This document shows, in pieces, positions 37,057 to 59,565 of a stretch of DNA of 64,000 nt (its first letter is position 1; each line of letters begins with the position of its first letter). The notes beneath the pieces were generated by a model, which was given only the letters and a program-made list of their open reading frames with translations, had not been told where the DNA came from and made no database searches. A program made the translations under genes and the position numbers. The DNA is taken from positions 1 to 64,000 of the IMG/VR virus record IMGVR_UViG_3300029908_000004; one strand, given 5' to 3'.

Positions 37057-37191
37057 GGATATAGTTTGAACAAGATGTTTTTCGATGCTACCATTACACC
37101 AAGCTGGCATAAATTATTAAATGGTGCCAGCCCTGGGATTTGAACCCAGACCCGTTCGTTATGAGTGAAGATAACCTTGCTCTGTCGACCC
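37057..37191 (-). ncRNA. YrlA-like Y RNA 1 (permuted tRNA-like domain)
   Basis: GGGTCGA-N8-GGTTATC, then T arm CTGGG-TTCAAAT-CCCAG, acceptor GGCTGGC/GCCAGCT closed by a loop, D arm GTGT-AATGGTA-GCAT, and 3' CTTGTTCAAACTATATCC pairing with the 5' end. Confidence 0.85.
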
Positions 37192-37214
37192 GTATGATTT
37201 GAATTTAATGATGA

Positions 37215-37348
37215 GGATATGGGGTGGAATTGGGTAAGCCTTTCGGCTGACGGATGTTCTACCATTTGAACTACATCCACTCGATTGAATGGAAGATTGG
37301 ACTCGAACCAATAACATTCTGTTTGAGATAACCAATTTCTATCGACCC
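37215..37348 (-). ncRNA. YrlA-like Y RNA 2
   Basis: GGGTCGA-N8-GGTTATC; ATTGG-TTCGAGT-CCAAT; acceptor hairpin; GTTC-AAATGGTA-GAAC; 3' CCAATT...ATATCC. Confidence 0.85.
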
Positions 37349-47546: not shown

Positions 47547-48095
47547 TTATCCAATACTTTCGGGGTCATCATCAACATAGTTTACTGTAGCCATAGAAGC
47601 AGGCATACAAAACTCATTCACTGACATTTTGTAACCACGGTTTGAGATTGTGAATGAATCTTTCCAGTTCCATTCGTCCATTACATAATTACGGAAATCT
47701 TCTTCCGTTACTTCAATGATCGTGTCAGAAGACATTTCTAGCATTGTAATCGCTCTGTCGTAGGACCTAAGATAACAACATGGGGCTGATTCAGATATGC
47801 TTAGTGAACTTATTTGTTTTGAAATGTCAATCTTAGCATCAGGCTCTTTGACTTTTGAGACTGCCCAAGTAAGTTTCTTCTTACACAGAGTCCGGAAATC
47901 GGCTACTGCTTCACGATATTCCTTCTCGTGTTTGATCCTGTTTGATTTCAGTTTCGTAACAAGGTCGGAGACCTTCATTTTTACGGATTTCATTTGAATC
48001 TCTTCTCCTAAGGTATATGGTTTGAAAGGACGATATTGTTGGTAGTTAGTAGGCTGTATATCAGTGAATTCAGCGAATAATATTGGATTTGGCAT
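47547..48095 (-). CDS. Hypothetical protein
   Basis: SYDRAITMLEMSSD...FRNYVMDEWNWK. Confidence 0.7.
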   Translation of the reverse strand: MPNPILFAEFTDIQPTNYQQYRPFKPYTLGEEIQMKSVKMKVSDLVTKLKSNRIKHEKEYREAVADFRTLCKKKLTWAVSKVKEPDAKIDISKQISSLSISESAPCCYLRSYDRAITMLEMSSDTIIEVTEEDFRNYVMDEWNWKDSFTISNRGYKMSVNEFCMPASMATVNYVDDDPESIG

Positions 48096-48121
48096 ATGAC
48101 AGGGAGTACACCACTGTATTC

Positions 48122-48316
48122 CTAGTTATCTTTAGATCCACATTTCAAAACGTTCTGAAATATATTTATTAATAACTGTCTATTAAGTTCTTGTTGTTCA
48201 ATTATACTCTTCAAAGCTGCCCTTGAGTAGGAGTTATGGAAATACAAAGTTACTATCAAAGCTACAAACCATGCAGTTGTAGGTAGTACAAAGACCCAAA
48301 ATTCATGAGCGGTCAT
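48122..48316 (-). CDS. Small membrane protein
   Basis: N-terminal transmembrane helix. Confidence 0.55.
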   Translation of the reverse strand: MTAHEFWVFVLPTTAWFVALIVTLYFHNSYSRAALKSIIEQQELNRQLLINIFQNVLKCGSKDN

Positions 48317-48853
48317 TTATATCTTCTCTCCTTGACCCTTCTCTGCGGATTCTTCTTTAGTACCTACCAAACCAATGTGAGTTAATCTCCCCGGGGTGTC
48401 AGCTTCAGTTAGAACCTTCTTCATAACTCCCAATAGGAGAAGAGCACTTTCACGTTGACCTTCTGTTATATCCTCGTGCGTATCAACTGAACGCTTAACT
48501 AATAGTTCCTTAAGAACTATACGTTCGTCGTCACTGATAGTTAGAGTATCTAATTTCTCTAATAACTTGTCCATTTGAAGATATCGAGGGTGAGGATGAT
48601 GCAAATCAGCTGTTAATTTAGCTTGGACTGTCGCCCATAACGGTGTGACTTGAGTATTTAGAACTGTTAGTTGTTTATCGATATCTTGTTTCCATACCAA
48701 CAACGCGTCCTCAGCTTCTTTTCTGTCTTTTTTAGCTTGTACATATAACGTATACACCAAGCCAAGTGTAGCAGAAAACCCAGCTAGTAAAAAACTGAAC
48801 CACCAATTTCCTGTTGTTGCTAACTCTGTAAATACTATTGTAAAAAGTAACAT
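48317..48853 (-). CDS. Membrane-anchored coiled-coil protein
   Basis: Transmembrane helix followed by a helical region. Confidence 0.6.
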   Translation of the reverse strand: MLLFTIVFTELATTGNWWFSFLLAGFSATLGLVYTLYVQAKKDRKEAEDALLVWKQDIDKQLTVLNTQVTPLWATVQAKLTADLHHPHPRYLQMDKLLEKLDTLTISDDERIVLKELLVKRSVDTHEDITEGQRESALLLLGVMKKVLTEADTPGRLTHIGLVGTKEESAEKGQGEKI

Positions 48854-48929
48854 AACTCAATGTCCCCGTCTATCCATTAAATGCTTGGAACTCTGGGGTT
48901 CACTGGTTGTAATGGGTCTTTCTGTTCCC

Positions 48930-49260
48930 AGGTAGACCCTAACCCGGTTAATCAACTAAGAAGATTAACAATACGCTGGGGCAGAAACACTGGCTAGGCT
49001 GGAAATCATCCAGGCTGGCAGAGTGTCGATACCAACAGCGTTTACGTTAACAGTTTTGCCTGTTATTGTTGTATAGTCGTTTAACGTGAGCCTATAGCAC
49101 GACCTGTCATTATTTGCAATTCATACCAAGCGAACCCGGGAGCGGCCCCTATGGTGGACACTCGGGATTCAACCTCCGTGCCCTTATAATTGGTGGACCG
49201 CGAGGGAGTTGAACCCTCGTTAATGGTCATGCTTACAAATAAATCATACAGGTTTAACCG
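48930..49260 (-). ncRNA. ssrA: Circularly permuted two-piece tmRNA
   Basis: The acceptor piece (49260-49191: T arm GAGGG-TTCAACT-CCCTC, GCGGTCC-A-CCA) precedes the coding piece starting GGGCCGC at 49148 (G3:U70). Helix 2 TTGCAAATAA/TTATTTGTAA; pk1-like element; AATAACA-GGC resume context; tag ORF 49060-48965. Confidence 0.85.
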
Positions 49261-49746
49261 TTAGAACTTAAATACTATTCCACCGCTATAACGAAACCCA
49301 GAGACCCCTTTACCATCATGAATTGAATATATGTGGTCTAGGTCAATGGCTCTAATAGCAACATGTTTAAATAGGTTGTAATCAACTGCTCCGCCAGTGG
49401 CTATAGCAAATCCAGAATCCGAAAACTTATTAATCTCTGCACGTTCCCAGCCTAGTAATACGTGGCTGGATACGTCTATGTTTCCTACTGAGAATAACTT
49501 TACAGTAGGACCAACAGAGTATACATAAGCTCGCTTACCGTCTGAGAAATTGCCACTTAGGTCTACTGTTGCACCAAACCTAGGAGTGAAGAAGTAAGTT
49601 CCATCTGCTTGATACCCAAGCACGTTGGAAAACTGACTTACATCTGTATGGCGATATTGAATACCACCGTAGACCTCGACCTTGTCTTGGGCGAGTGCGA
49701 AAGTACTTAATAGTACCATAGCAACAGCTAACATGAAATTACGCAT
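49261..49746 (-). CDS. Outer-membrane beta-barrel protein (8-stranded, OmpX/Ail-like)
   Basis: Signal peptide, amphipathic strands, C-terminal GIVFKF. Confidence 0.75.
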   Translation of the reverse strand: MRNFMLAVAMVLLSTFALAQDKVEVYGGIQYRHTDVSQFSNVLGYQADGTYFFTPRFGATVDLSGNFSDGKRAYVYSVGPTVKLFSVGNIDVSSHVLLGWERAEINKFSDSGFAIATGGAVDYNLFKHVAIRAIDLDHIYSIHDGKGVSGFRYSGGIVFKF

Positions 49747-49863
49747 TTATATTTCTCTCCTTGGAAATCTTATGGGAATCAGGTGCAGGGCTTTAGGCTA
49801 CAATCCCATCTTGTAGTAGCTCCTAAAGTGTCTAGTGTTACCTAGAGCCTACACCCTCACTAT

Positions 49864-49938
49864 TGGCGATCCAGATCGGATTTGAACCGACACAAACTTC
49901 AGAGACAGTGAAGTGCACTGCCGTTATGCTACTGGACC
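49864..49938 (-). tRNA. tRNA-Asp(GTC)
   Basis: CTTCA-CT GTC TC-TGAAG; G73; CCA. Confidence 0.9.
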
Positions 49939-49950
49939 AAAATCTTAGGT

Positions 49951-50213
49951 GGATATAATTGGAATTGGATATTTCGGATATCTTAGTCCAGCAAACATCA
50001 CCAGCGTCAAATATCCTACACCTTTATGTGGTCAAAGGTAACCGCACTGACTTCTCAATACTAGTAGTGTCTTAACCAGACACAGGCTTATAACTATTTA
50101 ACCTCTGTGTTTGCTATTCTTTCAAATAGCTCTTCTCTATCAGAGAAGGTTTAATTGTCCCCGAGGTAACGGGTACTTGCACGGTTATAGAGATAACCAA
50201 GTTCCGGCGACCC
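49951..50213 (-). ncRNA. Long Y-RNA-family member (about 263 nt)
   Basis: GGGTCGC-N8-GGTTATC at the 5' end; GGAACTTGG pairs with the 3' CCAATTCC; ends TATATCC; several internal hairpins. Confidence 0.65.
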
Positions 50214-50223
50214 ACCAAAGGTC

Positions 50224-50394
50224 TTAATGCTTTATTGTTACTCCTGCTGTGTTTACAAAACCTAATAACACGGTTAGAGCCCAGAAGAATAACCCCCAAG
50301 CTAGCATATTAAATCTAGGATTGGGGAAATTAACACCACAAGCTGCGATCAATAAACAAACCACAGCTAAAATCATTAGAACTAAACCTACCAT
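50224..50394 (-). CDS. Small membrane protein with two transmembrane helices (56 aa)
   Basis: MVGLVLMILAVVCLLIAACGVNFPNPRFNMLAWGLFFWALTVLLG... Confidence 0.65.
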   Translation of the reverse strand: MVGLVLMILAVVCLLIAACGVNFPNPRFNMLAWGLFFWALTVLLGFVNTAGVTIKH

Positions 50395-50445
50395 TGTAAA
50401 ACCCCCATATTTACCTTCTAGAGGTTCAACGAACGTAGTTTGTTG

Positions 50446-50667
50446 TTATTGCAATCCAAGTAGTGGAAGTTTTGCTCCACCACTCTTACCTCTTGTCTTC
50501 TTGCCGGGCTTGAACTTAGCCTTGGCATATCTGACAGAGGGTGGGTATGCTTTCATTACCCTTTCACGATGAGCTTCACGTTCAGCTGCCTTACGAAGTC
50601 TCGTAGCTTCTTTCTGCTCTTCAGTCCTTGGGAGATGTACAGTTTCTCCATTCACTCGACAGCGCAT
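50446..50667 (-). CDS. Small basic protein
   Basis: 73 aa, K/R-rich; SD AAGGAG. Confidence 0.55.
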   Translation of the reverse strand: MRCRVNGETVHLPRTEEQKEATRLRKAAEREAHRERVMKAYPPSVRYAKAKFKPGKKTRGKSGGAKLPLLGLQ

Positions 50668-50709
50668 ATGTAGCTCCTTTTAATGTTTGGAACTATTTAT
50701 TCATCTCTC

Positions 50710-50784
50710 GGATATGGATTGACAAAGGTATTGCCTGCACGCAGGCTGTCATTTTAATTGTAGATAACCTTTATACTTCGACCC
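50710..50784 (-). ncRNA. Short Y-RNA-family member
   Basis: GGGTCGA-N8-GGTTATC...CCTTTGTCAATCCATATCC; ends pair. Confidence 0.8.
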
Positions 50785-50802
50785 GAGATTCTTTGTTGCT
50801 TA

Positions 50803-50904
50803 AGATGTAGATTGATAAGGGAATGCCTTTTCCCGAGATGGATCCGGGAACCACTGTAGGCAACAGCTAGCTTGCGCTTTTAGATAACCCTTGTCGTTCG
50901 ACCC
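50803..50904 (-). ncRNA. Y-RNA-family member
   Basis: GGGTCGA-N8-GGTTATC...CCCTTATCAATCTACATCT. Confidence 0.8.
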
Positions 50905-50926
50905 TAAGCGGAATTTATATTGTTAT

Positions 50927-51026
50927 GGATATGGATTGATAAGGTTATGCCTTATTTGGGTATCGAAACCCGCTGCAGGCGACAGTTAGACTTTCGTCCA
51001 TCCAGATAATCCTCGTCGGTCGACCC
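50927..51026 (-). ncRNA. Y-RNA-family member with a T-loop-like hairpin
   Basis: GGGTCGA-N8-GATTATC...GGGTTTCGATACCC...CCTTATCAATCCATATCC. Confidence 0.8.
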
Positions 51027-51044
51027 ATAACAAAGTTGTTAAAA

Positions 51045-51188
51045 CTACTTCTTTTTACCACCCTTACCACGGTTACCACCAACGGTTGTGGTGGCTGTCT
51101 TGTTCAATGACTCGAAGCCGCCCTTTTTACTTGGTTTGCCAGTGCTACCGATCTTACCCTGACCCGGATCTTTACCCTTGTGAATCAT
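51045..51188 (-). CDS. Gly/Lys-rich basic peptide (47 aa)
   Basis: MIHKGKDPGQGKIGSTGKPSKKGGFESLNKTATTTVGGNRGKGGKKK; SD upstream. Confidence 0.55.
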   Translation of the reverse strand: MIHKGKDPGQGKIGSTGKPSKKGGFESLNKTATTTVGGNRGKGGKKK

Positions 51189-51219
51189 CGTACTCTCCCT
51201 TATTTGTACTACTTAATAT

Positions 51220-51240
51220 TGGTGGACCCAGCGAGAATTG
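51220..51240 (-). pseudogene. 3' fragment of the original tRNA-Ala
   Basis: CAATTCTCGC-TGGGTCC-A-CCA (U70) pairs with the 5' fragment GGGCTCT. Confidence 0.72.
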
Positions 51241-51283
51241 CACCTTTGTAAATGTTATACTATATAGATACGAAAGGATTTGT

Positions 51284-51362
51284 TGGTGGATCGTATGAGA
51301 ATCGAACTCATCTGAAATCTTCTTTGCAAAAGAAGTGACCACCCCGTGCAGTCCCACAACCC
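51284..51362 (-). tRNA. tRNA-Ala(TGC), replacement copy
   Basis: CTTCT-TT TGC AA-AGAAG; G3:U70; CCA. Confidence 0.88.
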
Positions 51363-51368
51363 ATTTAT

Positions 51369-51899
51369 ATGCCAATTCGTAACTGTTTATATTGTAACAA
51401 ACTATTTGATGCTCCACAACGTGATATTACCAGAGGTAATGGTAAATACTGTTCCAGGAAATGCTCTGGAAACTATAAGAGCTCTCTTCCTAGTAAAGCT
51501 CCTATTATAGAGCTTACTTGTGCTTATTGTAATAGTACATTTACTAAGCCTTCCAGATACGTTAGAAAAGCCAATTCTAGAAGCGGATTGCGCTTTTGTA
51601 ACCGTAAGTGTAAAGAACTTGGACAGCGATTAGACGGTGGTAACATAAAAGCTATACAACCATCTCATTTTGGCACAGGTACCGGAGAACACCATTATAG
51701 AGCAAAAGCTCTAAACGCATTCCCAAATAAGTGTAATAGATGTGGATATGATGAATTAATAGGGATCCTTGTTGTACACCACAAGGATCGTAACCGTTCC
51801 AATTCTCATCTATCAAACTTAGAGATTCTGTGCCCAAATTGTCACGCTAAAGAACATTACATTAATCACGATGGATCGTATAGCTCAAAGAGAAAATGA
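51369..51899 (+). mobile_element. Antisense HNH homing endonuclease gene (HEG6)
   Basis: CNRCG...VHHKDRNRSNSHLSNLEILCPNCHAKEH; CSRKC repeats; promoter motif at 51256-51266. Confidence 0.9.
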
Positions 51900-51900
51900 T

Positions 51901-51944
51901 GCTGCTTTGCAAGAGCATTGCTCTCCCGAATGAGCTAAGAGCCC
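51901..51944 (-). pseudogene. 5' fragment of the original tRNA-Ala(TGC)
   Basis: GGGCTCTTAGCTCATTCGGGAGAGCAATGCTCTTGCAAAGCAG, abutting the HEG6 stop codon. Confidence 0.8.
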
Positions 51945-52284
51945 ACGTCGTGCTTTCCTATTTAGTATACCACCAAATGTTGGAAAACACTAGAATCTTT
52001 AATCTCTTTCTCTTTCTCTTTCGCGACTCAACGCCTTCTGTTCGCGAGACCACCAGAACTTCCATGAAACACTTCTACCATCGTAGTACCAGCCAAGCGC
52101 TTTCAAACGTTCGTACGTTTCTGGTGAGGTTCCTGTCTTCTTAAGTTCTTCTGGCATTTTCTTTTCCTCATCTTGGGATTTTAGTGGAGTAGCCCGGCTA
52201 TCCGCGTCGGGCTACCCCGGTTAATTTGATGTCAAACCTAAATGGTTTTAACAAATTACGGTAGTTGTATAAACACGTGTCTGG

Positions 52285-52465
52285 AACTACGATTGTTTAC
52301 GTTAATCTCGGTGCTTTACCATTGAGCTACTCAGGCATATGTTTTGGGGCCCGAGGAGAGCATCGAACTCTCATACCCGATTTTGAAAGAAATCGTCTAC
52401 CAGATGTTGTTTCTACCAAGTGAACCTCTTGGGTAATAGATTAACGTTAAACTTAATCGTTTATT
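52285..52465 (-). ncRNA. Permuted tRNA-like RNA with a long closing stem and no GGGUCGA motif
   Basis: T arm GAGAG-TTCGATG-CTCTC, CTCGGGC-C-CCA, short linker, GCCTGAG, D arm GCTC-AATGGTA-AAGC; flanks ACGTTAATCT/AGATTAACGT pair. Confidence 0.7.
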
Positions 52466-52790
52466 TAACCTGACCCTGAGGTTGAAAGAATCCTTGCGGA
52501 CTCTTCCCAAGCTTGTTAGTTATTAGCCACTTTGTCTTTGTACTTAAGACCGGGCTTATTGCGTTTGTCCATCTTTTTCTTTGCTGATGCAATGTGTTTC
52601 TGCTTGTTACTGAACTTCATTGTACCACCTCTATAAAACATTTCTCCTACGGCAAGAAGACGAATCTTCTAGGTGGTAACATCGCATTAAACCCACGACT
52701 CTTGTTGGTTATGACCCAACCTCCGTTTACTACGTCCGTGCGACTAGTTCGTAGCGACCTCGGGGATTCCGTCCTATAGGAGAAAACTTA

Positions 52791-53549
52791 TTATGCTAAT
52801 GGAACAAGGATATAATCCATCAGCTTCTTGCCAATCTTTGAGCTTGATACGTCAATGTCCTGCTCATTGGCGCGGGCTCTTGCCTTCTTGACGAATCTTG
52901 ACAGGTTTTCAACCCTCTCCAGAAGTGAAGCTTTCATAACTGGAGTCAACATTGAGGACCATTCCTGAGTTCTCAATAGACCTGTTGCAATGGTTTCTTC
53001 CAGAATTTGACACTGTGCTGGATGTTTGTCTGTAGCCGGGTACAGAACTAGTGGTTTCTTTACAAGTGTTTTGCGCTCTGATTCCACGTCTCTCGCTTGA
53101 TAGATTCCTACTGAGCGGTTATCGTCTTGCTTGAACCCTTTTGTTGGATCAAGTGTTGGAATAGCTGTCAGAAGAACCTGAACTTCCTTCAACCTCTTTT
53201 CCAACTGCAATAGACTTGTGGCGGGGACATCCTTCAGGATTGTGTTTCCGTCATCGTCTACCACATCTGCTCTTGCTTGAGTATTTGCTACATCAACCTG
53301 ATGTGACAGGTCAATACTCTTGATCTGGAATGCCGACCACCACAACAGTTCATCTTTCACTGTTGTCTGAATCTCTGACACTTCCTCGATCTTGACTGGT
53401 GCACCTTCTGTATAAGCAGAGTAGGTCTTACGAATCTCACTGAAATGAGATCTTTTCTTCTCGAAGGTGGCCTCTAATTCAGTCCGTGTTTTTGCGGCTT
53501 GATTTTCCAAATTCTTCTCAACCGCTAGTAACTCATGTAGCTTTGGCAT
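52791..53549 (-). CDS. Conserved phage coiled-coil protein
   Basis: MPKLHELLAVEK...VPATSLLQLEK...IPTLDP...YPATDKHPAQ...KKARARAN. Confidence 0.8.
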   Translation of the reverse strand: MPKLHELLAVEKNLENQAAKTRTELEATFEKKRSHFSEIRKTYSAYTEGAPVKIEEVSEIQTTVKDELLWWSAFQIKSIDLSHQVDVANTQARADVVDDDGNTILKDVPATSLLQLEKRLKEVQVLLTAIPTLDPTKGFKQDDNRSVGIYQARDVESERKTLVKKPLVLYPATDKHPAQCQILEETIATGLLRTQEWSSMLTPVMKASLLERVENLSRFVKKARARANEQDIDVSSSKIGKKLMDYILVPLA

Positions 53550-56986: not shown

Positions 56987-58687
56987 TTACTCCGCTTCTG
57001 CTTCTTCAGTTTCCAATACTTCCGTTTTCCCTGAAACGAATTGGGCAATCAACGAAGGCACATTGGTATCGAATCCAACCACGTCCAACGAACGTACATC
57101 GTTTGGATCTGCGATCGAGAATCCAGTTGCTGTCATCCCGATGACAATCTGATGAGCGTTACGTCCAGAACTCTGACGATAGCTCTCCAAAGCGCTAAAT
57201 ACGTGTTTAGGTCCTGCCCAAGTCTCGTTGTCAGTGATGTTGACAAACACATCGACTGGCATCTTCTTTTCTTGTGCATCCTTATATGGAAGTGAACAAT
57301 CTGTTCCTCCCCACCCTGTGCGTAGTGCCTTGGATATTGCTGCGTCTAGCTTCATGGATTTAACCAATCCAACATCAATCATCTTGGTGTTGTAGGAAGC
57401 AACGTGATGCCATGGCTCATTATGCATGATTACCATAGCCATTGCTACTGCACCCATGATTGGTGACATGTTTGGACAACCAACAAGATTTCCCCATCCC
57501 ATTGAGCCGGAACAATCCAAGCCAATGTAATAGTTCAAATTGGTGGTTTCAGCATTCTTAAACGTCTTATAGAACGCTGCGTCCATAGCATCCAAAACTG
57601 GTTTCACCACTGTCCAAGTCAACGAGCCACGAATGCCATGACCAGTTTGATAGGTTAACATAGCATTCAGAACAGTTAGTGGGTGAACACGACTACGTTG
57701 CAGATATTCCTGATCCGACAGACGTGTTACTACTAGCTTTGACGCCTCTGATAGAGGAGCTAACAGCTTGATGCTACTCATCTTACCAAGGTTCCTGATC
57801 ATTGCGTTCATGGGCATTTTCTGAAGCAATGCCTCCCAAACTGCAACGTGGTTCAATGCCTCTGTAGGGATCATTTCGCGAGTGAGGTTGTACTTCTGAA
57901 TCGCTGAAATGATTACCTTTGGGTCTTTTTCATTCTTCATTGCCTCGAACTGCTTAATCAGTTCTGGCAAGTCCTTCTCTAAATCGGTTGCTCCGTGCAG
58001 ACCTTTGGTAGCCCAATCAAACAAGGCTTTCTGCCCATTCGACAACGTAGCATGGGTACCTGCATGGGTGGCACGAAGGATGTCGCGATGGCTCCATCCT
58101 TGTGTTCCATCCACACGCCGTGATTGGTATTTCACCATCTGATAAGCCAGTTTCTGCTCATCTTTCTGTGTGTACCAATCTGCTACGCCGTTGCGTAGTG
58201 ACCTATTCCAACGCATCTTTGCGGCACCTTCGGCCTGTTTTGACCGCATGCCTTTCAGATATTCCATTAGTTGGAACAAATGCGTTCCGATACGTGCTAC
58301 GTCTGGCAGTTTATCCAAGGCGTAACCACGAGTGGATTTGTCACCGAATGCTATACACTGTGCCAACGCGAACAGGGCATAGTCATTCTTTGGAGCCCGG
58401 CCAGATACAGAGATATCGACAATCGTTTTTACTGTCTTCTCTCCATCTGCCGAAATACAGCGTTCAACGCACTTTGCGTTGTCACGCGTCAACTTGTCGG
58501 CACCAACATAATAAGTGCCACCTTCGCTTCCAAGAATTATAAATCTCTGGAGTCGGTCCCAGTCACTCAGTTCAAAAACATAACCTCCAGCGTTATTCTG
58601 AACTTGATTCTTTTCTGGGAATGGTTCACTTTGAGGAATTGTTGGCTTCATCGCCCCATACACATTTGTTAGGTTGGGTTTCTTCAT
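56987..58687 (-). CDS. rsr: Ro60/Rsr TROVE-domain RNA-binding protein with a vWA domain
   Basis: QVQNNAGGYVF...DRLQRFIILGSEGGTYY...KYQSR..GWSHRDILRATH...MIRNLGKMS...SRVHPL...LDCSGSM...GGTDCSLP...TDNETW...VVGFDTNVP. Confidence 0.96.
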   Translation of the reverse strand: MKKPNLTNVYGAMKPTIPQSEPFPEKNQVQNNAGGYVFELSDWDRLQRFIILGSEGGTYYVGADKLTRDNAKCVERCISADGEKTVKTIVDISVSGRAPKNDYALFALAQCIAFGDKSTRGYALDKLPDVARIGTHLFQLMEYLKGMRSKQAEGAAKMRWNRSLRNGVADWYTQKDEQKLAYQMVKYQSRRVDGTQGWSHRDILRATHAGTHATLSNGQKALFDWATKGLHGATDLEKDLPELIKQFEAMKNEKDPKVIISAIQKYNLTREMIPTEALNHVAVWEALLQKMPMNAMIRNLGKMSSIKLLAPLSEASKLVVTRLSDQEYLQRSRVHPLTVLNAMLTYQTGHGIRGSLTWTVVKPVLDAMDAAFYKTFKNAETTNLNYYIGLDCSGSMGWGNLVGCPNMSPIMGAVAMAMVIMHNEPWHHVASYNTKMIDVGLVKSMKLDAAISKALRTGWGGTDCSLPYKDAQEKKMPVDVFVNITDNETWAGPKHVFSALESYRQSSGRNAHQIVIGMTATGFSIADPNDVRSLDVVGFDTNVPSLIAQFVSGKTEVLETEEAEAE

Positions 58688-58940: not shown

Positions 58941-58993
58941 GGATATGATGTTGCATAGGGTTTGTTGTCAAGGTAACCCTACGCGTTCGACCC
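58941..58993 (-). ncRNA. Minimal Y-RNA-family member (53 nt)
   Basis: GGGTCGA-N8-GGTTACC...CCCTATGCAACATCATATCC. Confidence 0.75.
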
Positions 58994-59014
58994 GTGGTCG
59001 AATTTTGTTGCTAT

Positions 59015-59076
59015 GGATATAATACGATTGAAGGCGTTTTTATCTGCAATGATTGATAACCTTCATTCTTCGACCC
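59015..59076 (-). ncRNA. Minimal Y-RNA-family member
   Basis: GGGTCGA-N8-GGTTATC...CCTTCAATCGTATTATATCC. Confidence 0.75.
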
Positions 59077-59096
59077 ATAGCCGATATTAATAGAGT

Positions 59097-59164
59097 GGAT
59101 ATAAACAACTTTGCTGGGATATTGTTTAAATTAGCAGTTTAAGGTAACCCAACGATCTCGACCC
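59097..59164 (-). ncRNA. Minimal Y-RNA-family member
   Basis: GGGTCGA-N8-GGTTACC...CCCAGCAAAGTTGTTTATATCC. Confidence 0.75.
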
Positions 59165-59331
59165 ACTCCATGATTTGATGGTGGAAAGAGGTATTGTATG
59201 TTTGGCCCAACACCGGCCTAGATATATCCGCAGTGCTGGTTTCCTCTCTTACAAATTACCTAGTTCTAGGCACCAAATAACCGTAAGCCACCAAACTTTA
59301 TTACTTCGTTTCAAAATCTTTAATATCTAGT

Positions 59332-59452
59332 AGATATAAATTTGACTGGATGTTTTAGAGTGTCCTGCCAATTAGACGATGCCGGTTACCCGGTAGAGAG
59401 ATTCGAACTCCCATAACCCGCTCCATAGGCGATAACCCAATCGGGTCGACCC
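59332..59452 (-). ncRNA. YrlA-like Y RNA 3
   Basis: GGGTCGA-N8-GGTTATC; GGGAG-TTCGAAT-CTCTC; acceptor hairpin ACCGG-GTAA-CCGG; D arm GTCT-AATTGGC-AGGAC; 3' ATATCT. Confidence 0.85.
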
Positions 59453-59502
59453 ACTAGATAAATTCATTTGCTCCCTAGGAGCGCTTTACATTCTTATGGT
59501 GT

Positions 59503-59565
59503 GGATATAAACAACTTAGTCAGGAAGTTTATCAAAGTAATAAGGTAATCCTAACTATTCGACCC
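59503..59565 (-). ncRNA. Minimal Y-RNA-family member
   Basis: GGGTCGA-N8-GATTACC...CCTGACTAAGTTGTTTATATCC; shares its 3' 17 nt with the 59097 copy. Confidence 0.75.

What the first reader, a model, noticed from the sequence alone, without database searches (positions are those of the whole stretch)
49951..50213. Unusually long, multi-hairpin Y-RNA-family member
Seen: a variant 5' motif, GGGTCGC-N8-GGTTATC, whose GGAACTTGG pairs with CCAATTCC about 240 nt downstream before a TATATCC end. The interior holds several hairpins (CTTCTCT/AGAGAAG, GCTATT/AATAGC, GTGTCT/AGACAC, ACCTTT/AAAGGT) and no tRNA-like domain. Inference: a new effector domain attached to a Ro60 handle.
Basis: partly seen in the sequence, partly recalled or inferred. 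Interest (0 to 1): 0.6.

Follow-up and report, generated by a model that had tools for sequence, protein, structure and literature searches.

The report
Oversized Y-RNA-like RNA in a jumbo phage
A 215-kb phage from peat that encodes its own Ro60 protein and about a dozen Y-RNA-like genes also makes a 263-nt version, about twice the length of the next longest, whose conserved closing stem encloses about 215 nt of hairpins instead of a tRNA-like domain; what that interior does is unknown.

Summary
On the minus strand, window 50213-49951, GGGUCGC-N8-GGUUAUC opens an element that closes 263 nt later in CCAAUUCC-AAUU-AUAUCC. All the listed hairpins are present.

Ten other elements in the window share this handle, all on the minus strand. 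A TROVE/vWA Ro60 gene lies 6.5 kb away on the same strand. The same motif sits next to Ro60 genes in many distant phages: 50 of 51 matches in 21 loci are on the Ro60 strand. GGGUCGC is a common variant there, so the '5' variant' is ordinary.

The paralogs span 53-135 nt; this one spans 263 nt and has no tRNA-like domain. Metatranscriptome contigs lie at 49956-50208 and 49952-50181, so a discrete RNA of about this size is made.

Not shown: Ro60 binding, the fold of the interior, or any function. I found no ortholog, so the interior has no covariation support. The neighbouring proteins are also orphans.

Verdict: a real, expressed, unusually long member of the bacterial/phage Y-RNA-like (Yrl) family. 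It is a new variant of a known kind. The 'new effector domain' idea is plausible but untested.

The parts
49948..50216 (-). The whole element, closing stem included: a 269-nt Y-RNA-like RNA (263 nt from GGG to AUAUCC)
   Evidence: Fold z = -3.96. RNA-library contigs lie at 49956-50208 (X15) and 49952-50181 (X17).
50210..50216 (-). Outer stem, 5' strand GGUGGGU
   Evidence: Pairs with AUCCACC at 49948-49954, mean pair probability 0.96. The same register is used in all paralogs.
49948..49954 (-). Outer stem, 3' strand AUCCACC. It overlaps the conserved 3' motif AUAUCC at 49951-49956.
   Evidence: The 3' motif AUAUCC, or a close variant of it, ends all 11 copies.
50207..50213 (-). 5' motif GGGUCGC, corresponding to GNCGAA of bacterial Yrl RNAs (the presumed Ro60 contact)
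   Evidence: The motif is described in PMC4201824. C at position 7 is also seen in L110 and L146.
50197..50205 (-). Inner stem, 5' strand GGAACUUGG
   Evidence: Pairs with CCAAUUCC at 49961-49968 with a bulged C, probability 0.6-0.8.
49961..49968 (-). Inner stem, 3' strand CCAAUUCC
   Evidence: This strand is identical in the paralog at 37348-37215.
50192..50198 (-). GGUUAUC, containing the conserved YUAY of Yrl RNAs. Here it can also form a small hairpin with AUAACC at 50183-50188.
   Evidence: hairpin probability 0.3.
49976..50182 (-). Interior of about 207 nt, specific to this copy. Hairpins at 50173-50160, 50148-50132, 50130-50113 (can close on a GAAA loop), 50083-50067, 50039-50020 and 50016-49976.
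   Evidence: Pair probabilities 0.5-0.99. No paralog anywhere in the genome, stops in all six frames and no frame open across it. No Rfam family.
49864..49938 (-). tRNA-Asp(GUC). Nine bases separate it from the end of the closing stem (12 from the end of AUAUCC). It is the likely co-transcript, and RNase P cleavage at its 5' end would define the 3' side of the element.
   Evidence: The processing step is inferred.
56987..58687 (-). Phage Ro60 ortholog, 566 aa, with TROVE and vWA_Ro60 domains: the presumed protein partner
58941..59565 (-). Cluster of five shorter Y-like paralogs directly upstream of Ro60: 59565-59503, 59452-59332, 59164-59097, 59076-59015, 58993-58941
50710..51026 (-). Three shorter paralogs: 51026-50927, 50904-50803, 50784-50710
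37057..37348 (-). Two paralogs with tRNA-like domains: 37348-37215 (the closest relative of the finding's handle) and 37191-37057

Best explanation
The element is a phage-encoded non-coding RNA of the bacterial/phage Y-RNA-like (Yrl) family.

Shown: its 5' and 3' ends form the two-step closing stem that all members in this genome share. That stem consists of a variable outer helix ending in GGGU:AUCC, an internal loop holding the CG(A/C) of the GNCGAA-type motif, an inner helix of about 8 bp, and then GGUUAUC. An RNA of this extent is present in peat metatranscriptomes.

Inferred: the RNA is transcribed on the minus strand together with the upstream small membrane-protein gene and the downstream tRNA-Asp, then cut out of that precursor, with RNase P at the tRNA defining its 3' side. 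The handle docks on the phage's own Ro60 ring. The roughly 215-nt interior, six or seven hairpins in place of the tRNA-like or short-hairpin module of its paralogs, acts as the variable adaptor end of a Y RNA. It would bring another protein or RNA to Ro60, or gate Ro60 differently.

The handle is most similar to the tRNA-like paralog at 37348-37215. The element therefore probably arose by duplication of such a copy followed by replacement or expansion of the distal module.
For: Family and handle:
- Eleven copies of the motif, all on the minus strand, against about 1.5 expected by chance.
- The cognate 5'/3' pairing beats all non-cognate combinations in 14 of 15 family members. The one exception had a 3' end that I mis-assigned at first and later corrected. 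The finding itself scores -18.9 against a non-cognate mean of -12.0, sd 2.1.
- An unbiased scan of candidate 3' sites picks a length of 263 nt.

Link to Ro60:
- A TROVE + vWA_Ro60 gene lies on the same strand, 6.5 kb away.
- Five paralogs lie directly upstream of it. Related phages with 70-72% identical Ro60 have the same arrangement.
- In 21 IMG/VR Ro60 loci (34-44% identity), 50 of 51 motif matches are on the Ro60 strand, mostly within 5 kb upstream. The motif also sits upstream of Ro60 in L143-L145.
- The motif matches the published GNCGAA and YUAY features (PMC4201824).
- The GGGUCGC-type copy in L110 aligns over its full length to Rfam YrlA at E = 4e-4.

Expression:
- In RNA run X15 a 253-nt contig lies at 49956-50208, separate from its neighbour at 50201-50460. 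In X17 a contig lies at 49952-50181. X18 and X4 contigs run across the 5' boundary, which fits a longer precursor.

Non-coding and structured:
- Stops in all six frames and no Pfam match for the small ORFs.
- Fold z = -3.96. The minus strand folds better than the plus strand, -85 against -76 kcal/mol.

Precedent:
- D. radiodurans Yrn2 is made on one precursor with tRNA-Asp and Yrn1 (PMC4201824).
Against: - No ortholog of this copy was found, so neither its handle nor its interior has covariation support of its own.
- The first A of CGAA, invariant in the other ten copies of this genome, is C here.
- The handle pairing alone is only modestly better than chance.
- Rfam YrlA, YrlB and Y_RNA do not match the element at E <= 10.
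- The contigs give neither strand nor exact ends, and the tool warns that contig depth is a poor measure of level.
- The interior fold is a thermodynamic prediction only, and parts of it are ambiguous: GUGUCU/AGACAC competes with ACACAG/CUGUGU.
- The genome has no RtcB. No candidate partner for the interior is known.
Confidence: 0.6

Rival explanations
1. A decayed or hitch-hiking family member. A former Y-like gene acquired about 150 nt of extra sequence in its distal part. It is still cut out and accumulates because the closing stem protects it, but it no longer works with Ro60 and the interior has no function.
For: The conserved A of CGAA is replaced by C, the only such case in this genome. 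The interior has no relative anywhere searched. The flanking genes are orphans, so the region turns over quickly.
Against: C at that position is common in Ro60-linked copies elsewhere, including a full tRNA-like copy right next to Ro60. Both handle helices are intact. The interior folds much better than shuffled sequence, with several perfect 6-7-bp hairpins. The RNA was assembled from four separate RNA libraries.
Confidence: 0.2
2. The shared handle is mainly a processing and stability cassette for RNAs cut out of the long tRNA-array transcripts, for example a site for a double-strand-specific nuclease. The long RNA would then be a separate regulatory RNA or decoy that only borrows the cassette, acting without Ro60.
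For: All copies lie among 28 tRNA genes on one strand. The element abuts a tRNA and an ORF, and RNA contigs cross its 5' boundary. The copies at 37 kb and 50-51 kb are 6-21 kb from Ro60.
Against: Across 21 unrelated Ro60 loci the motif follows the Ro60 gene and its strand, 50 of 51 matches. It also matches the published Ro60-contact motif. Both observations tie the handle to Ro60 rather than to tRNA arrays in general.
Confidence: 0.12
3. It is not an independent RNA. It is the structured 3' untranslated region of the 56-codon membrane-protein gene, or the leader of tRNA-Asp, and the resemblance of its ends to the Y-like handle is chance.
For: It starts 7 nt after the stop codon of ORF 50224-50394 and ends 9 nt before the tRNA. 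The handle pairing alone reaches only about p = 0.02-0.08.
Against: A 24-nt match to the family's 5' motif (83% to the copy at 37348), the exact 3' motif and in-register pairing together are unlikely by chance. In two RNA runs a separate contig ends within 5 nt of the proposed ends.
Confidence: 0.05

Closest known systems
YrlA-type bacterial and phage Y RNAs (Chen et al. 2014, PMC4201824; Rfam RF02553)
   Same: The 5' and 3' ends pair into a long stem. There is a GNCGA-type motif near the 5' end and a YUAY about 10 nt later. The gene lies on the same strand as a Ro60 ortholog. Two paralogs in this window and the copies in L110 and L143 give sub-threshold YrlA matches.
   Different: There is no T-arm or D-arm tRNA-like domain, which is the hallmark of YrlA. 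It is 263 nt long, against about 110-147 nt for characterised YrlA. It has CGCC where the motif has CGAA. It lies 6.5 kb from Ro60, whereas nearly all published best matches lie within 4 kb. Rfam gives no match to this copy.
Hairpin-type bacterial Y RNAs without a full tRNA-like domain (S. Typhimurium YrlB, RF02565; D. radiodurans Yrn2; Thermus phage phiLo Yrl1/Yrl2, PMC12135203)
   Same: A Ro60-type handle carries a distal part that is not tRNA-like. Several such RNAs sit beside one Ro60 gene. Yrn2 is co-transcribed with tRNA-Asp. The phiLo Yrls were identified by their CGAA motif and position upstream of phage Ro60.
   Different: Those RNAs are simple long hairpins with a small loop. Here the distal part is a multi-branched region of about 215 nt with six or seven hairpins.
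Metazoan Y RNAs (Rfam RF00019; 84-112 nt in humans, PMC8973356)
   Same: Modular design: a stem made from both ends with a conserved Ro60-contact sequence (GGUCCGA in vertebrates, GGGUCGN here), plus a variable distal module that binds other factors.
   Different: Metazoan Y RNAs are polymerase III transcripts with a 3' oligo-U La site and are much shorter. There is no detectable sequence homology beyond the short motif.

Membership tests
Y RNA / Yrl family (Ro60-associated ncRNAs) | The 5' and 3' ends base-pair into a closing stem | tested here: met
   Outer stem probability 0.96, inner stem 0.6-0.8. The cognate pairing ranks first against 14 non-cognate partners. It is the best of 11 local 3' candidates.
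Y RNA / Yrl family (Ro60-associated ncRNAs) | Conserved Ro60-contact motif near the 5' end (GNCGAAN0-1G in bacteria; PMC4201824) | tested here: inconclusive
   The element has GUCGCCG. GNCG is kept and AA is replaced by CC. Ro60-adjacent copies in L110 and L146 also carry C after CG, so the strict published motif is not met but the natural variation of the family is.
Y RNA / Yrl family (Ro60-associated ncRNAs) | Encoded near a Ro60 (TROVE) gene on the same strand | tested here: met
   Ro60 lies at 56987-58687 on the minus strand. The element is 6.5 kb downstream on the same strand, farther than the 4 kb typical in PMC4201824.
Y RNA / Yrl family (Ro60-associated ncRNAs) | Physically bound by Ro60, and dependent on Ro60 for accumulation | not testable with these tools
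   This needs EMSA or co-immunoprecipitation with the phage Ro60.
Y RNA / Yrl family (Ro60-associated ncRNAs) | Expressed as a discrete small RNA | tested here: met
   Separate RNA-library contigs lie at 49956-50208 (X15) and 49952-50181 (X17). Strand and exact ends are not resolved by contigs.
YrlA subfamily (Rfam RF02553) | tRNA-like domain with T-arm and D-arm | tested here: not met
   ARAGORN and Rfam tRNA/YrlA find nothing inside 49951-50213. The paralogs at 37348, 37191 and 59452 do have T-arm sequences.
YrlA / YrlB / Y_RNA covariance models of Rfam 15 | Score at or above the gathering threshold | tested here: not met
   No match even at E <= 10 over 48500-51500. These models are narrow: even the clear tRNA-like copies reach only 26-36 bits against a threshold of 69.

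The most novel reading that the evidence does not exclude
Phage Ro60 works with a whole set of interchangeable adaptor RNAs, at least 12 in this genome. The 263-nt member carries a large, independently folded domain that recruits a partner no known Y RNA recruits, such as a host RNA-decay or defence component, or a specific host or phage RNA. That would make it the first 'long' Y RNA with a complex effector module.
Probability: 0.25. Interest if true: 0.75.

Novelty: new variant of a known kind. Interest (0 to 1): 0.5.

Why it matters
Y RNAs are thought to work as modular adaptors: one end holds Ro60 and the other decides what Ro60 acts on. Very few distal modules are known. They are the tRNA-like domain, simple hairpins, and the PNPase-binding end.

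This element is a naturally occurring, well-expressed copy whose distal module is about 215 nt of new structured RNA. It sits in a genome that also supplies ten shorter paralogs as built-in controls. That makes it a convenient test of the adaptor idea: same handle, different cargo. It also offers a way into what phage-encoded Ro60 is for, which is still an open question.

The wider survey adds two points. The GGGUCGN-N8-GGUUAYC handle marks Ro60-linked RNAs across many unrelated phages. Multi-copy arrays of such RNAs are common, which is useful for annotating phage genomes.

Tried and rejected
Searches for orthologs of the long element all failed:
- The only other copy in IMG/VR, L108, is 100% identical.
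- The handle-plus-first-hairpin pattern found nothing in viral contigs.
- The same pattern found 31 hits in metagenome contigs. Thirty are one unrelated sequence, mostly on gut-metagenome contigs, and one is a chance hit.
- The flanking 161-aa and 56-aa proteins have no relatives among 5.8 billion proteins.
- The Ro60 protein finds no close relative in viral contigs or GTDB genomes.
- The three closest Ro60 relatives (70-75% identity) sit on contigs of 2-9 kb that do not reach the syntenic position, and one of them has no DNA held.
- BLAST and nhmmer of the element against all fetched Ro60 loci and against its own genome found nothing beyond the 5' motif.

A covariance model of the handle was started (alignments A1-A3) and abandoned. 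MAFFT misplaced the 3' strands because the linker lengths differ, and a 215-nt insertion would be penalised out of detection. I used the cognate versus non-cognate duplex test instead.

The 106 IMG/VR hits to the short motif are mostly chance. Only 4 have a Ro60 gene in the fetched flank.

Other readings rejected:
- A peptide-coding reading: stops in every frame, and no Pfam hit for the 30-61-codon ORFs.
- Any other known RNA family: no Rfam match.
- A link to RtcB RNA repair: the genome has no RtcB.

The sigma-70 promoter and terminator scan was uninformative.

Nothing in this window called for a referred step.

Full report
**Where the window comes from.** The window is the first 64 kb of a 215,291-bp IMG/VR virus record, 41% G+C, rated complete by CheckV. 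It carries phage replication genes: DNA polymerase, clamp and clamp loader, ligase, an exonuclease V-like helicase and a class II ribonucleotide reductase. Near-identical DNA occurs in many peat metagenomes and metatranscriptomes. Everything relevant lies on the minus strand: 28 tRNA genes, a tmRNA-like gene, and a 566-aa Ro60 ortholog with TROVE and vWA_Ro60 domains at 56987-58687. That Ro60 is about 40% identical to the Ro-like proteins of cluster C mycobacteriophages.

**The observation.** Read on the minus strand, 50213-49951 begins GGGUCGC-CGGAACUU-GGUUAUC and ends CCAAUUCC-AAUU-AUAUCC. GGAACUUGG pairs with CCAAUUCC (8 bp, one bulged C). Just outside, GGUGGGU pairs with AUCCACC.

In the thermodynamic ensemble the outer stem has probability 0.96 and the inner stem 0.6-0.8. 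The interior hairpins range from 0.5 to 0.99. The 285-nt stretch folds at -85 kcal/mol, z = -3.96. The plus strand reaches -76.1, and the mirrored minus-strand structure scores only -69.6 on the plus strand. All six frames contain stops, the small ORFs match no Pfam family, and ARAGORN and Rfam find no tRNA-like part.

**It is one of a family.** The motif GGGUCG(A/C)-N8-RGRUUAYC occurs 11 times in the genome. All copies are on the minus strand and all are in the tRNA region. Shuffled sequence gives about 1.5 matches.

Each copy closes in the same way:
- a variable outer helix that ends in GGGU:AUCC;
- a loop containing CGA;
- a variable inner helix of about 8 bp;
- GGUUAYC at the top;
- on the 3' side, the inner strand, a 4-10-nt linker and (U/C)AUAUCC.

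The helices differ in sequence between copies but stay complementary. I paired every 5' segment with every 3' segment of 15 family members, 11 from this genome and 4 from related phages. The cognate partner was the best in 14 rows. The exception was a copy whose 3' end I had first placed wrongly. For the finding the cognate energy is -18.9 kcal/mol against a non-cognate mean of -12.0, sd 2.1. An unbiased scan of all 11 candidate 3' sites within 420 nt also picks the site at 263 nt.

Taken alone, the pairing is only moderately unusual. Eight percent of random 36-mers do as well, and the cognate site ranks 3rd of 163 ATATCC sites in the genome. The case therefore rests on the combination of motif, register and expression data.

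**The handle is tied to Ro60.**
- Five copies lie directly upstream of the Ro60 gene (58941-59565).
- The two fetchable related phages, with Ro60 70-72% identical (L109, L110), have the same elements in the same place. These include covarying changes inside the 'conserved' GGGU:AUCC (GAGG:UCUUC in L109).
- More distant phages, with Ro60 46-51% identical (L143-L145), carry the motif in the gap upstream of Ro60.
- Four of the 106 IMG/VR hits to the short motif have a Ro60 gene in the fetched flank.
- In 21 IMG/VR loci retrieved only by their Ro60 gene (34-44% identity), I counted 51 motif matches in 13 loci. Fifty are on the Ro60 strand, mostly within 5 kb upstream, with up to nine or ten copies per locus.

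The motif corresponds to two features Chen et al. (2014) described for bacterial and phage YrlA/YrlB. One is GNCGAAN0-1G near the 5' end, likened to the GGUCCGA contacted by Xenopus Ro60. The other is a conserved YUAY (PMC4201824). The L110 copy aligns over its full length to Rfam YrlA at E = 4e-4, below the family's high threshold. Two elements in the window give weaker YrlA matches: the copy at 37348-37215 and a separate YrlA-like element at 52280-52399.

Position 7 is C in the L110 copy and in five of the nine L146 copies.

**What is unusual.** The ten paralogs span 53, 62, 63, 68, 75, 100, 102, 121, 134 and 135 nt from GGG to AUCC. This one spans 263 nt. Confidently paired elements in the other phage loci span 53-138 nt. 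The few longer assignments there are ambiguous.

The longer paralogs owe their length to a tRNA-like domain. This one instead has about 215 nt with six or seven hairpins, one of which can close on a GAAA tetraloop. The interior has no detectable relative in the genome or in any locus fetched. The handle is closest to the tRNA-like copy at 37348-37215: 25 of 32 nt at the 5' end, and an identical inner 3' strand. That suggests descent from such a copy.

**Expression.** Contigs from four peat metatranscriptome runs were laid on 48000-53500.
- In X15 a 253-nt contig lies at 49956-50208. It is separate from the neighbouring contig at 50201-50460, and long stretches on either side have no contig at all.
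- In X17 a contig lies at 49952-50181.
- In X18 (50031-50335) and X4 (49816-50975) contigs cross the 5' boundary.

Uneven coverage of this kind is not what DNA contamination would give. The contig ends fall within 5 nt of the proposed RNA ends. The crossing contigs point to a longer precursor that also carries the upstream 56-codon membrane-protein gene.

The tool warns that contigs show neither strand nor exact ends nor level. I therefore report the contigs' word depth (230 against about 25 for the neighbour) only as a hint. No sequence differences were seen in the element in any run.

**Mechanism.** Shown: the handle architecture, its family-wide covariation, its genomic link to Ro60, and the presence of an RNA of this extent.

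Inferred: processing from a polycistronic transcript, with RNase P cleavage at tRNA-Asp, which begins 9 nt after the closing stem. D. radiodurans offers a precedent, since Yrn2 is made with tRNA-Asp and Yrn1 on one precursor. Also inferred is docking of the handle on phage Ro60, with the interior acting as the variable adaptor end. Known Y RNAs tether Ro60 to PNPase, and the Thermus phage phiLo Yrl RNAs bind host PNPase.

No partner can be named. The genome has no RtcB.

**Limits.** No ortholog of this copy could be found by any route (see Tried and rejected), so the interior fold is a prediction only. Ro60 binding is untested, and the copy departs from the strict CGAA motif.

**Verdict.** This is a real, expressed, unusually long member of a known RNA family: a new variant of a known kind. 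The 'effector domain' idea remains open.

Noticed in passing
window 48911-49312 (-): A tmRNA-like gene. Rfam permuted-tmRNA scores 42.5 bits (threshold 47), with weaker standard and alpha-tmRNA matches; ARAGORN does not call it. An RNA-library contig covers 48936-49312 with Illumina adapter sequence at both ends, which suggests a discrete RNA of about 377 nt. A two-piece tmRNA in a phage would be unusual.
   Followed up: partly
window 37057-59565 (-), and loci L146, L164: The phage carries at least 12 Y-RNA-like genes: 11 with the GGGUCG handle, plus a YrlA-like element at about 52280-52405 with a GACGAU motif and T and D arms. They are scattered through a 28-tRNA array. Arrays of 9-10 handle motifs also lie beside Ro60 in unrelated IMG/VR phages.
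   Followed up: partly
window 59176-59322 (-); L109:6052-6232: A further conserved non-coding stretch sits inside the Y-RNA cluster upstream of Ro60. The blocks AGAGGAAACC and GGGCCAAACAUACAAUACCUCU are identical in a phage whose Ro60 is 72% identical, and 4 of 21 predicted pairs show changes on both sides. It may be another Ro60-linked RNA of a different type.
   Followed up: partly
window 52219-52327: In RNA run X15 a fragment with adapter sequence at both ends lies here. It overlaps the 3' part of the YrlA-like element and the sequence downstream, and may be a processed RNA species.
   Followed up: no
window 49951-49985 (-): The 3' 35 nt of the element carry three AUAUCC motifs (GAUAUCC, AAUAUCC, UAUAUCC). 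Doubled (A)UCC motifs also end the copies at 51026, 50784 and in L110. They could allow alternative registers with GGGU, or form part of the protein-binding site.
   Followed up: no
window 51369-51899 (+): An HNH endonuclease ORF is the only plus-strand gene in this neighbourhood. It lies next to tRNA-Ala (51284-51362) and is probably a homing endonuclease.
   Followed up: no
window 49261-49746 (-), 50224-50394 (-): The two ORFs flanking the element and its tRNA (161 aa, and 56 aa with two predicted membrane helices) have no relatives among 5.8 billion proteins apart from identical copies.
   Followed up: yes
window 52791-53549 (-): A 252-aa protein gives a strong full-length match to DUF7873 (216 bits). 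Its function is unknown. It lies between the Y-like copies and Ro60.
   Followed up: no
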